Positions 62,083 to 63,783 of a stretch of DNA of 63,783 nucleotides are shown here, one piece after another. The position numbers and the translations under genes are program-made. The DNA comes from Octopus bimaculoides (Eukaryota): assembly GCF_001194135.2 (NCBI RefSeq), contig NC_068987.1, forward strand, positions 74,779,957-74,843,739, given 5' to 3'. Position 1 is the first letter of the stretch, and the number at the start of each line of letters is the position of its first letter. A model generated the notes under the pieces. It was given only the letters and a program-made list of their open reading frames with translations. It had not been told where the DNA came from and did not search any database.

Positions 62083-63783
62083 ATGGCGGACTCGGAGGAG
62101 TCGTTACAAGACAACGAGCTGTTTACACTGAAAAGTTTCCTGGACAATTTTGATCTTCCACAAACTGTACTTGTTGTGTCGCCAGGTAACTGCCAGACGA
62201 CTCCTGCTGTCGAAGAAGGTCAGTGGCTGCGTTTGTATAAAACTGTTATCCCCAGAGTGTTGTTGACACCTTGTAAGGCAGACGATGACTGCGAGTGGGA
62301 CACGCACTATGATCCGTCGGCCAAGACTCCGGTCACGGATCACGACACAATTGAAGTACCTATAGACTATCCAGCACGGTACGTTGTTCTTTCACCTCCA
62401 CATGACGAACAGGAGCCGGACGCGATCTACGAGACGATAAATGATTTAATGAAGGTATCACCGCCATTATTTAAAGCGAACTGTTCGTCGTGCTTCTCGC
62501 AACAGAGTTTCATTGGAGAAATACAGAAAAATAATTTTGAGGCTGGAGATACATTCAAGTTTCTGAAAATCGTTCGCGATGGATATTTCGGGAAATATTT
62601 ACAATGCCAACACCAAGACGGTCGTATTATGGAACTTCCATGGTCATGTAAGGGTGATTTTTCTTACGTCGTTGATTCGAATACCACTTACACTGTGGAA
62701 CAACTTCTGGAAGCGAATCGCATGCCCAGGTATCTTTGGCAAGCTGATGAAATGGTTGATCACAGTGATTACCAAGACAGCATCATACGTGTGGGAGTTG
62801 ATTCCCCCTCAAAAGTATTCACAGACGACCCATTTTTCAACGACGATTCGATCGACATGTCTGAATCACAATTCTCTAATCAACGGAATAGTTTTCGTTC
62901 TGCGAAATTATCTGGAAGGAATATTATTTATATGGACATTCCTGAGATGTTTGTCCAGGTTTATCACACTAGTGACCCTACTGATAGTGTTGACGCTGAT
63001 CCCACACAGAATGGCGAATCAGACGTAAGGTGGCTCATTCCTCTTAGCTCTGACATGCTTGTTAAATGTATATCCGTTCCAGATTATGAACATCCCAAAA
63101 ATTACAAAGCTCGTCGTACATTATGGGAAGTGGCATCGGAATATACTCGACCATTAATTTTCTTCCCAGTTCTAGCCCAAATTGTATCTTACCCCGACCT
63201 TCCTTCTGAATTCGTCGCTTATCTTAAACCAAAGTCACAAATAGTTCTTCGAAGAGTGGAACATATCGATAAAATTCTTGCGCGAACGGAAGACAGATTC
63301 TTCATAATTGGACCTAATCTTTATAAAAGTTTCTCTGCATTACCACGGAGATTTCGGAATGTCTCTGAATTAAGTATTTGCAAGGCTGGCTGTGAACTGC
63401 AGGTATTGGAAGATGTGGCCACTGACTTTCCGAAACCAATTAGTTTGAATAAAGGTGATATCATCCGAATTCCAAACTTCCAGACCGTTGTCTATAAATT
63501 CGGAGGTGGCGATTACAAAATGGAATGTAAAGTGTTAAGATGTGAGAAACTAAATTCTCGTGGAAAATACGAGAAACTGAAGATACCTGTGGATTTAGAA
63601 ATTGATTTAATTGAAATGATTGCTAACGAAGATAGAGAAAGATGGTTCGTGTCCGAATTATTCTACCGTCGGCCAAAATTACCACTGGATGTAGAAGCCG
63701 GGGATTTCTACCCGACAGTAAATGCAAACACAGTGCTAACTTTAGAAAATTTTGTTCGAGACTCAGTTGTGGTTGTGTCTAAC
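62083..63783 (+). CDS. THEMIS-like tandem-CABIT-domain protein, 3'-partial (567 codons open to the window end)
   Basis: Hand translation: ATG in AAAATGG context, in-frame upstream TAA at 62065, no stop for 1701 nt. CABIT signature LQC-x7-MELPWSCKGDF (62599-62661). Second, degenerate module VLRCEKL...LKIP (Cys at 63541). Colinear blocks with remembered human THEMIS: LKSFLDNFDLPQTV, IEVPIDYPARY, YTVEQLLE, FPVLAQIV, LPRRFRNVSEL, LPLDV, LENFVRDSVVVVS. Confidence 0.85.
   Translation, partial: MADSEESLQDNELFTLKSFLDNFDLPQTVLVVSPGNCQTTPAVEEGQWLRLYKTVIPRVLLTPCKADDDCEWDTHYDPSAKTPVTDHDTIEVPIDYPARYVVLSPPHDEQEPDAIYETINDLMKVSPPLFKANCSSCFSQQSFIGEIQKNNFEAGDTFKFLKIVRDGYFGKYLQCQHQDGRIMELPWSCKGDFSYVVDSNTTYTVEQLLEANRMPRYLWQADEMVDHSDYQDSIIRVGVDSPSKVFTDDPFFNDDSIDMSESQFSNQRNSFRSAKLSGRNIIYMDIPEMFVQVYHTSDPTDSVDADPTQNGESDVRWLIPLSSDMLVKCISVPDYEHPKNYKARRTLWEVASEYTRPLIFFPVLAQIVSYPDLPSEFVAYLKPKSQIVLRRVEHIDKILARTEDRFFIIGPNLYKSFSALPRRFRNVSELSICKAGCELQVLEDVATDFPKPISLNKGDIIRIPNFQTVVYKFGGGDYKMECKVLRCEKLNSRGKYEKLKIPVDLEIDLIEMIANEDRERWFVSELFYRRPKLPLDVEAGDFYPTVNANTVLTLENFVRDSVVVVSN

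What the first reader, a model, noticed from the sequence alone, without database searches (positions are those of the whole stretch)
62083..63783. THEMIS-like two-CABIT protein in an invertebrate, absent from the ORF track
Seen: at least 567 uninterrupted codons. Module 1 matches the CABIT signature (phi-x-C-x7-26-phi-x-LP-phi-x3-G-x-F) exactly as LQC-QHQDGRI-MELPWSCKGDF (Cys175). Module 2 keeps VLRCEK (Cys487) and IP but has lost the GxF. Blocks align colinearly across both modules with human THEMIS as I recall it (FPVLAQIV~FPIVTEVI, LPRRFRNVSEL~RPREFPTAYDL, VLRCEK~VLACEK, LENFVRDSVVVVS~LEEDITDSYLLIS). About 50 extra acidic residues lie in module 1. Established: tandem-CABIT THEMIS proteins are known as vertebrate lymphocyte regulators acting on SHP-1/GRB2, whereas GAREM and Drosophila Serrano have a single CABIT. 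Inference: a THEMIS-type architecture with both conserved cysteines in a mollusc would point to a pre-lymphocyte THEMIS-SHP signalling module, for example in haemocytes or neurons.
Basis: partly seen in the sequence, partly recalled or inferred. Interest (0 to 1): 0.8.

Follow-up and report, generated by a model that had tools for sequence, protein, structure and literature searches.

The report
Octopus two-CABIT THEMIS-like adaptor gene
The window ends in the first coding exon of a real, conserved octopus gene with the same two-domain (tandem CABIT) architecture as the vertebrate lymphocyte regulator THEMIS, but without the sequence features THEMIS uses to bind GRB2 and SHP-1, so it is an old relative of THEMIS and probably not a working equivalent.

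Summary
An ATG at 62083 opens 567 stop-free codons that run off the window. They are 96% identical to Octopus sinensis LOC115214407 (833 aa) and under purifying selection (dN/dS 0.19).

Module 1 (aa 1-337) passes the Pfam CABIT threshold and carries the exact core motif. Module 2 (aa 338-567+) gets no Pfam hit on its own. A profile of cephalopod orthologs aligns it end to end with CABIT2 of solved THEMIS (E 5e-10).

Orthologs occur in chitons, bivalves, gastropods and cephalopods. Profile-profile scores pair module 1 with THEMIS CABIT1 and module 2 with CABIT2, each better than the two modules pair with each other. The duplication therefore predates the mollusc-vertebrate split.

The functional inference is not supported. 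The cephalopod proteins lack the PxRPxK GRB2 motif, the R544/R545 hot-spot arginines and the Tyr34 loop needed for SHP-1 binding. Their disordered tails instead carry mollusc-conserved tyrosine and basic-serine motifs, which suggests phosphorylation-dependent docking.

The proteins are already in databases, some auto-named "protein THEMIS", but are uncharacterised. Verdict: a new member of a known kind, of moderate interest.

The parts
62065..62067 (+). In-frame TAA stop upstream of the start codon, which fixes the N-terminus
62083..63783 (+). First 567 codons of the large first coding exon of the octopus tandem-CABIT gene (ortholog of O. sinensis LOC115214407). In O. sinensis this exon runs to codon 648
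   Evidence: 96% aa identity, dN/dS 0.19
62083..63093 (+). Module 1, CABIT1-type domain (aa 1-337)
   Evidence: Pfam CABIT 53.7 bits for this half alone against a 24-bit cut-off. Mollusc M1 HMM hits THEMIS CABIT1. hhalign M1-V1 score 78
62599..62661 (+). Exact CABIT core motif LQCQHQDGRIMELPWSCKGDF (aa 173-193, Cys175)
   Evidence: 2 of 20,000 shuffles contain such a match
62803..62913 (+). Largest low-confidence loop of module 1 (aa 241-277). It is Asp-rich and mostly cephalopod-specific
63079..63105 (+). Short low-confidence linker between the two modules (aa 333-341)
63094..63783 (+). Module 2, CABIT2-type domain (aa 338-567). The window end cuts off about its last 80 residues, including the C-terminal helix
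   Evidence: profile positions 363-633 align with THEMIS 281-547, E 5e-10; M2 HMM 52-76 bits on vertebrate CABIT2; hhalign M2-V2 score 137
63535..63609 (+). Degenerate core motif of module 2, LRCEKLNSRGKYEKLKIPVDLEIDL (aa 485-509, Cys487). LP has become IP and GxF has become IDL

Best explanation
The stretch is the start of a functional octopus gene for a cytosolic, non-enzymatic adaptor protein with two CABIT domains in tandem. Each domain is an all-beta core with an SH3-like head. A roughly 190-residue disordered tail follows, encoded on small exons beyond the window.

The protein belongs to a family found across molluscs. Its domains correspond one-to-one with CABIT1 and CABIT2 of vertebrate THEMIS, so the duplication that made the tandem is older than the protostome-deuterostome split.

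Shown: the gene is real and under purifying selection, it has two CABIT modules, the modules correspond by position to those of THEMIS, and the known THEMIS determinants for GRB2 and SHP-1 binding are absent.

Inferred: the two domains act as a rigid protein-binding platform. Partners are recruited mainly through phosphorylation of conserved linear motifs in the tail:
- an acidic ...N-x-Y-E-D-V tyrosine motif present across molluscs;
- a YEN motif (GRB2/Drk SH2-type) in cephalopods;
- a basic [KR][KR]x[FLI]S site.

That is a GAREM-like, signal-dependent docking mode, not the constitutive clamp that THEMIS forms on the GRB2 C-terminal SH3 domain.
For: Gene is real and constrained:
- 567 open codons.
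- 96% identity to O. sinensis with dN/dS 0.19; module 2 alone 0.11.
- One 648-codon exon holds both modules in O. sinensis.

Two CABITs:
- Pfam hit on module 1 at 64 bits for the whole protein.
- Cephalopod profile against PDB THEMIS, E 5e-10, over all of CABIT2, plus a weak colinear stretch on the CABIT1 core.
- AlphaFold model from a 34-sequence alignment: two confident, mostly beta domains (aa 10-640, mostly pLDDT 80-95), each followed by disorder, with a C-terminal helix at 621-641.

Family spread: chiton, bivalve, gastropod and cephalopod orthologs.

Shared duplication, hhalign scores:
- M2-V2 137 and M1-V1 78, against M1-M2 43 and M2-V1 26.
- HMM hits on frog THEMIS and coelacanth THEMIS2 are colinear.

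Loss of THEMIS determinants:
- No PxRPxK in any mollusc.
- R544E/A, R545T, E483N/H/C, Y541F/I/T and I181T, F327D (read from the alignment), against the mutagenesis data in PMC13381594.
- Tyr34 loop absent, against PMC13320886.

Tail motifs: the distal acidic Tyr motif matches in 11 of 12 mollusc tails, and a twelfth variant is visible by eye. The basic Ser motif is in 10 of 12. YEN is in Octopus and Argonauta. The tail is predicted disordered.
Against: - No expression, interaction or phosphorylation data exist for any member. The docking mechanism rests on short linear motifs, which are weak predictors.
- Direct binding of CABIT domains to a SHP-type phosphatase domain has no mapped interface and cannot be excluded.
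- The R545-equivalent arginine is retained in several non-cephalopod molluscs, so some GRB2-SH3C contact in the wider family is conceivable.
- A second, unnamed group of two-CABIT proteins (group B) scores slightly closer to vertebrate THEMIS (B2-V2 173 against M2-V2 137). Some of its members keep PxRPxK. The mollusc family may therefore be a divergent paralog and not the direct ortholog.
- No GAREM or Serrano sequence could be included in the comparison.
- The V1 profile rests on two sequences only.
Confidence: 0.6

Rival explanations
1. It is a functional equivalent of THEMIS. It would bind GRB2/Drk constitutively and regulate a SHP-type phosphatase through its CABIT domains, for example in haemocytes.
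For: - Same two-domain architecture with positional correspondence.
- Both core cysteines and structural residues L411, C413 and Y546 are conserved.
- THEMIS CABIT modules are reported to bind the SHP-1 phosphatase domain directly (review PMC9250082). That surface is unmapped, so it cannot be excluded here.
Against: - Every determinant that could be tested is missing in cephalopods: the PxRPxK motif, R544/R545, whose single alanine mutations abolish GRB2 binding in THEMIS, and the Tyr34 loop.
Confidence: 0.15
2. The tandem arose independently in molluscs, by internal duplication of a single-CABIT GAREM/Serrano-type gene, and only converges on the THEMIS architecture.
For: - Module 1 resembles the single CABIT of a one-CABIT protein (P0045: 59 bits to M1, nothing to M2).
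- Module 1 is about equally similar to THEMIS CABIT1 and CABIT2 (78 against 71).
Against: - Modules 1 and 2 are less alike (43) than module 2 and THEMIS CABIT2 (137) or module 1 and THEMIS CABIT1 (78).
- THEMIS CABIT1 matches only first modules (78-82 against 26-33).
- Both modules align colinearly on THEMIS and THEMIS2.
Confidence: 0.07
3. The mollusc family is an old paralog. The direct counterpart of vertebrate THEMIS is the unnamed group B of two-CABIT proteins, some of which keep PxRPxK.
For: - B2-V2 173 is higher than M2-V2 137, and B1-V1 82 is at least M1-V1 78.
- Pfam sees both CABITs in group B but only one in molluscs.
- P0066 has two PxRPxK motifs, and P0043 has PPRPVR directly after module 2.
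Against: - The taxonomic origin of group B is unknown. All members are unnamed ENA or Logan contigs from different samples. They may simply be the orthologs from other phyla.
- No named mollusc protein fell into group B.
Confidence: 0.2
4. It is a chance ORF, a pseudogene or a transposon-derived reading frame.
For: None beyond the repeat-rich, gap-rich surroundings.
Against: - The probability of the open frame by chance is about 2e-16.
- dN/dS is 0.19.
- Orthologs occur across four mollusc classes.
- Pfam CABIT scores well above threshold.
Confidence: 0.01

Closest known systems
Vertebrate THEMIS / THEMIS2 (tandem-CABIT adaptors; solved structures 9i3p and 9iaz)
   Same: - Two CABIT domains joined by a short linker, followed by a disordered tail.
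- Module-by-module homology, with colinear HMM and profile hits.
- Conserved buried Cys in each SH3-like head, conserved CABIT2 C-terminal helix with an aromatic at the Y540 position and Y546.
   Different: - No PxRPxK proline-rich sequence after CABIT2.
- R544/R545 are replaced by Glu/Ala-Thr.
- No Tyr34 loop.
- The basic KRRPR cluster is reduced to LPRR.
- GxF of the module 2 core is replaced by IDL.
- About 59 extra loop residues in cephalopod module 1.
- Different tail motifs.
GAREM1/2 and Drosophila Serrano (single-CABIT adaptors)
   Same: - CABIT domain of the module 1 type at the N-terminus.
- Long disordered region with tyrosine motifs.
- Phosphotyrosine-dependent GRB2/SHP2 docking is the published GAREM mode (as cited) and is the mode proposed here.
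   Different: - The octopus protein has a second full CABIT domain.
- It has no detectable C-terminal SAM domain: Pfam finds only CABIT in the 833-aa ortholog, and the tail is predicted disordered.
- No GAREM or Serrano sequence was available for direct comparison.
Predicted mollusc proteins already in databases (Lottia V4AC98 'CABIT domain-containing protein', Aplysia LOC101845015, Elysia and Plakobranchus 'protein THEMIS')
   Same: Same family, matching across both modules at E-values from 1e-20 to 1e-67 against the cephalopod profile.
   Different: - They are uncharacterised. Pfam marks only one CABIT in those tested (Lottia, Aplysia).
- Gastropod versions carry tails of 400-530 residues rich in PxxPx[KR] motifs, which the cephalopod proteins lack.

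Membership tests
CABIT domain superfamily (Pfam PF12736) | Score above the Pfam gathering threshold | tested here: met
   64 bits against a 24-bit cut-off, E 1.9e-17. Orthologs score 53-70 bits.
CABIT domain superfamily (Pfam PF12736) | Core motif phi-x-C-x7-26-phi-x-LP-phi-x3-G-x-F | tested here: met
   Exact in module 1 (aa 173-193). Module 2 keeps phi-x-C...phi-x-[I]P-phi but not GxF.
CABIT domain superfamily (Pfam PF12736) | [quoted passage not shown] | tested here: inconclusive
   The AlphaFold model is confident and mostly beta. Foldseek hits are SH3 domains only, as reported for the THEMIS CABIT2 crystal structure. The Foldseek PDB copy predates the THEMIS entries, so no direct superposition was possible.
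THEMIS family | Two CABIT domains in tandem | tested here: met
   Module 2 aligns with THEMIS 281-547 at E 5e-10. M1 and M2 HMMs hit CABIT1 and CABIT2 of THEMIS and THEMIS2 in order.
THEMIS family | Domain-by-domain correspondence (shared duplication) | tested here: met
   hhalign scores: M2-V2 137, M1-V1 78, M1-M2 43, M2-V1 26. The V1 profile has only two sequences.
THEMIS family | Proline-rich PxRPxK sequence directly after CABIT2 (GRB2 SH3C site 1) | tested here: not met
   Absent from O. sinensis, Argonauta and all other mollusc orthologs. Present in all vertebrate hits. The region lies beyond the window, so it was tested on the full-length orthologs.
THEMIS family | GRB2 site 2 hot-spot arginines R544/R545 in the CABIT2 C-terminal helix | tested here: not met
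   Glu-Thr in O. sinensis and in the two unnamed cephalopod orthologs, Ala-Thr in Argonauta. Requirement taken from PMC13381594.
THEMIS family | Tyr34 loop in CABIT1 (LCK site needed for SHP-1 association) | tested here: not met
   The 8-residue loop GGSIYELCG is present only in the vertebrate sequences. Requirement taken from PMC13320886.
THEMIS family | Binding and regulation of SHP-1/SHP-2, and lymphoid or haemocyte expression | not testable with these tools
   No interaction or expression data are accessible.
GAREM / Serrano type | Single CABIT domain | tested here: not met
   Two modules are present.
GAREM / Serrano type | C-terminal SAM domain | tested here: not met
   Pfam finds only CABIT in the 833-aa and 816-aa orthologs. 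The tail 642-833 is predicted disordered.
GAREM / Serrano type | Tyrosine motifs that recruit GRB2 SH2 (YxN) and SHP2 after phosphorylation | tested here: inconclusive
   YEN at Y714/Y719 in Octopus and Argonauta, and a conserved distal YE[D][VI] motif across molluscs. Motif presence only, with no phosphorylation data.

The most novel reading that the evidence does not exclude
The tandem-CABIT architecture is a bilaterian-ancestral invention, and the mollusc gene is the direct descendant of the gene that became THEMIS. On this reading THEMIS was recruited into antigen-receptor signalling from an older adaptor that worked by phosphotyrosine docking. The PxRPxK/Arg-Arg clamp on GRB2 and the Tyr34 switch for SHP-1 would be later additions on the vertebrate or deuterostome line. 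Octopus and other molluscs would then give an outgroup for working out what a CABIT pair does in itself.
Probability: 0.4. Interest if true: 0.5.

Novelty: new member of a known kind. Interest (0 to 1): 0.35.

Why it matters
What CABIT domains do biochemically is still unsettled, even in mouse T cells. THEMIS has been reported both to activate and to inhibit SHP-1, and the first structures appeared only in 2024-2026.

A conserved invertebrate protein that keeps the two-domain scaffold but lacks the GRB2 and SHP-1 determinants separates what belongs to the CABIT pair from what was added in vertebrates. It shows that the duplication which produced CABIT1 and CABIT2 is far older than lymphocytes.

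There is also a practical point. The Pfam model misses the second CABIT in the whole mollusc family, so domain databases under-report tandem-CABIT proteins outside vertebrates.

The significance is evolutionary and comparative. Nothing here changes the current understanding of THEMIS itself.

Tried and rejected
- **Pfam on the C-terminal half alone** (aa 338-567, E up to 10): no hit.
- **BLASTP of the two halves against each other** suggested that GDF at about aa 540 was a displaced GxF of module 2. I rejected this: the HMM and profile alignments place IDL at the canonical position.
- **Two profile searches of the named protein database** returned only the same four cephalopod proteins and added nothing.
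- **AlphaFold with the 5-sequence alignment** failed (pLDDT 30). A 34-sequence alignment was needed.
- **Foldseek against PDB** could not find THEMIS, because that copy ends in April 2026, before those entries were released.
- **My reading of the P0066 and P0045 C-termini as SAM domains** was not confirmed by Pfam, the PDB sequence search or mutual BLASTP.
- **Finding the organisms behind group B through sample accessions** failed; all accessions differ and none is named.
- **The founding CABIT paper** (Johnson et al. 2009) is not in the held library. I could not check whether it already lists invertebrate two-CABIT proteins.
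Full report
**1. The observation**

The frame starting at 62083 translates into 567 codons without a stop, up to the last base of the window. The ATG sits in an AAAATGG context, and an in-frame TAA lies six codons upstream. With the local base composition, the chance of such an open frame is about 2e-16. 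The ORF lister omits ORFs that run off the end of the source, which explains its absence from the 'ORF track'.

LQCQHQDGRIMELPWSCKGDF at aa 173-193 (Cys175) fits the published CABIT core; the consensus is quoted in PMC9250082. Only 2 of 20,000 shuffles of the protein contain such a match. VLRCEK with Cys487 is followed by KIPVDLEIDL.

**2. Is it a gene?**

The translation is 96% identical over its full length to Octopus sinensis 'uncharacterized protein LOC115214407' (833 aa). It is 80% identical to the Argonauta hians ortholog and about 50% identical to two unnamed proteins that I take to be from more distant cephalopods.

Against the O. sinensis exon there are no indels, with 32 synonymous and 23 non-synonymous differences. 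dN/dS is 0.19 overall, 0.30 for module 1 and 0.11 for module 2.

In O. sinensis the gene spans 53 kb. One exon encodes aa 1-648, which covers both domains, and three small exons encode the tail. The window therefore holds the first 87% of that exon. At the DNA level, window positions 61099-63783 are 93.6% identical to O. sinensis. The window comes from a closely related octopus and not from O. sinensis itself.

**3. One CABIT or two?**

Pfam gives CABIT at 64 bits against a 24-bit cut-off, but both reported stretches lie in aa 1-337. The C-terminal half alone gets no Pfam hit, even at E up to 10. The same holds for the Lottia and Aplysia relatives.

A profile built from the window protein and its four cephalopod orthologs hits the solved THEMIS chains 9i3p_B, 9iaz_B and 9uou_B at E 5e-10. 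The main alignment covers profile positions 363-633 against THEMIS 281-547. That is nearly all of CABIT2, whose boundaries are 267-550 according to PMC13381594. A weak colinear stretch falls on the CABIT1 core.

HMMs built from 25 mollusc sequences gave these hits:

| Target | Module 1 HMM | Module 2 HMM | Best cross-hit |
|---|---|---|---|
| Frog THEMIS | residues 15-190, 29 bits | residues 269-495, 52 bits | 13 bits |
| Coelacanth THEMIS2 | residues 8-184, 18 bits | residues 245-482, 76 bits | 8 bits |

**4. Structure**

A 34-sequence alignment gave an AlphaFold model with two confident, mostly beta domains. Residues 10-640 are mostly pLDDT 80-95. There is a helix at 621-641. Low-confidence stretches are 68-80, 141-147, 241-277 and 309-313, plus the linker 333-341 and the tail 642-833.

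**5. Distribution**

An exhaustive HMMER search of 1.84 billion representative proteins found 43 relatives, 18 of them below E 1e-30. Named members are:
- the chiton Liolophura sinensis;
- the bivalve Potamilus streckersoni;
- the gastropods Lottia, Babylonia, Physella, Aplysia, Candidula, Elysia and Plakobranchus;
- the cephalopods Octopus and Argonauta.

The names are 'uncharacterized', 'CABIT domain-containing protein' or, for the two sacoglossan sea slugs, 'protein THEMIS'. Frog THEMIS (E 1.6e-6) and coelacanth THEMIS2 (E 1.9e-4) are also reached directly.

A further set of unnamed two-module proteins ('group B') comes from ENA and Logan contigs of unknown organisms.

**6. One duplication or several?**

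Profile-profile scores (hhalign), where M is mollusc, B is group B, V is vertebrate THEMIS/THEMIS2, and 1 and 2 are the modules:

| Pair | Score |
|---|---|
| M1-B1 | 327 |
| M2-B2 | 205 |
| B2-V2 | 173 |
| M2-V2 | 137 |
| B1-V1 | 82 |
| B1-V2 | 82 |
| M1-V1 | 78 |
| M1-V2 | 71 |
| B1-B2 | 59 |
| M1-M2 | 43 |
| B2-V1 | 33 |
| M2-V1 | 26 |
| V1-V2 | 23 |

Second modules from all three groups are much closer to each other than to any first module. Vertebrate CABIT1 is divergent and matches only first modules.

That pattern is what one ancient duplication predicts, and it is the opposite of independent duplications. Two caveats apply: the V1 profile has two sequences, and no GAREM or Serrano sequence was available. 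A one-CABIT protein among the hits (P0045) matches the module 1 HMM at 59 bits and gets no module 2 hit.

**7. Does it work like THEMIS?**

The cryo-EM study of THEMIS-GRB2 (PMC13381594) shows three contact sites. Binding is abolished by the double mutation P554A/P557A in PxRPxK, and by single R544A or R545A. I181, E483 and Y541 contribute, and F327 is dispensable.

Mapping onto the octopus ortholog:
- There is no PxRPxK anywhere, while every vertebrate hit that includes a tail has it directly after CABIT2.
- Residue changes are R544E, R545T, E483N and Y541F, plus I181T and F327D (from the alignment).
- The structural residues L411, C413, the aromatic at 540 and Y546 are kept.

SHP-1 association requires LCK phosphorylation of Tyr34 in an extended CABIT1 loop (PMC13320886). 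That loop is an 8-residue insertion present only in the vertebrate sequences.

The conserved cysteines are buried in the SH3-like heads and dispensable for THEMIS function. Some relatives carry Trp, Val or Phe at the module 2 position.

The scaffold is therefore conserved, but the known partner-binding features are not.

**8. What it probably does**

The tails of the mollusc proteins are predicted disordered. They share two short motifs:
- a basic [KR][KR]x[FLI]S site 30-50 residues after module 2, in 10 of 12 species;
- a distal acidic (D/E)N(L/I/F)-Y-E-(D)-(V/I) tyrosine motif, matched in 11 of 12. Candidula has ENFYEEL, which is visible.

Octopus and Argonauta also have FNIYENI. From general knowledge of SH2 specificity, pYxN is the GRB2-type consensus and pYExV/I suits Src-family, Fes or Nck-type SH2 domains.

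My inference, at modest confidence, is a scaffold whose recruitment depends on phosphorylation. That is closer to the published GAREM mode than to the constitutive THEMIS-GRB2 clamp. These tail motifs lie beyond the window and were read from the orthologs.

**9. Comparison and novelty**

The protein is a member of the CABIT superfamily with THEMIS-type architecture. It fails three THEMIS-specific features (the PxRPxK motif, the Arg-Arg hot spot and the Tyr34 loop) and two GAREM features (a single CABIT, and a SAM domain).

The superfamily is already described as metazoan, with single or double CABIT domains, and as reaching 'from cnidarians to mammals'. I found no paper on mollusc or other invertebrate two-CABIT proteins. 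The founding paper is not held.

It is a new, uncharacterised member of a known kind. The evolutionary point is real but moderate.

Noticed in passing
P0026, P0028/P0066, P0029, P0031, P0032, P0034, P0036-P0038, P0042-P0044 (loci L001-L003, L006, L008): A second, unnamed group of two-CABIT proteins from ENA and Logan contigs of unknown organisms. Pfam sees both CABITs in them. Their module 2 is closer to vertebrate CABIT2 than the mollusc one is (173 against 137). P0066 carries two PxRPxK motifs and P0043 has PPRPVR directly after module 2. This group may be nearer to the THEMIS ancestor than the mollusc family.
   Followed up: partly
L004 10001-11944 (O. sinensis); L002, L003, L005-L008: Both CABIT domains are encoded without an intron. 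In O. sinensis one 648-codon exon holds them. The unnamed genomic contigs carry uninterrupted ORFs of 507-646 codons that cover both modules.
   Followed up: partly
Tails of P0001, P0002, P0005, P0007, P0008, P0012, P0015, P0019, P0020, P0023, P0048 (beyond the window end): Two linear motifs are conserved across mollusc classes in otherwise divergent disordered tails: [KR][KR]x[FLI]S, and an acidic N-x-Y-E-D-V tyrosine motif. Gastropod tails are 400-530 residues long and rich in PxxPx[KR], while cephalopod tails are about 180 residues.
   Followed up: partly
Pfam PF12736 against P0007 and P0020, and the window protein aa 338-567: The Pfam CABIT model does not detect the second CABIT of the mollusc proteins tested. 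Domain databases would therefore show them as single-CABIT proteins.
   Followed up: yes
P0012, P0023, P0043, P0066 at the column of THEMIS Cys413: The 'universally conserved' CABIT2 cysteine is replaced by Trp, Val or Phe in four relatives. That fits a buried structural role better than a catalytic or redox one.
   Followed up: partly
P0066 aa 690-773 and P0045 aa 880-967: The C-terminal segments looked SAM-like to me, which would be the GAREM hallmark. Pfam, the PDB sequence search and mutual BLASTP gave no support, so this remains unconfirmed.
   Followed up: yes
window 31979-32248 and 48419-48680: Two copies of a dispersed repeat, 97-99% identical over about 265 bases and 16.4 kb apart. 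Each lies next to a run of N. It is either an interspersed element or an assembly artefact.
   Followed up: partly
window 4984-5472, 18994-19254, 30594-31008, 42572-43021 and four shorter runs: Eight assembly gaps (runs of N). The long gaps that fall inside listed ORFs are flanked by TA-rich simple repeats, which translate as YIYIYI.
   Followed up: no
window 46895-47067 and 47503-47661: Two blocks of short-period (about 8-base) tandem repeats, 550 bases apart.
   Followed up: no
window 28246-29001 (+): A 251-codon ORF with a repeated PVPEK(H)SK-like peptide unit and no Pfam match. It is probably a low-complexity repeat and not a gene.
   Followed up: partly
window 62579-63028 (+): A 149-codon ORF in another frame inside the CABIT coding sequence. 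It is the only ORF the lister shows here, and it is a by-product of the real frame.
   Followed up: no
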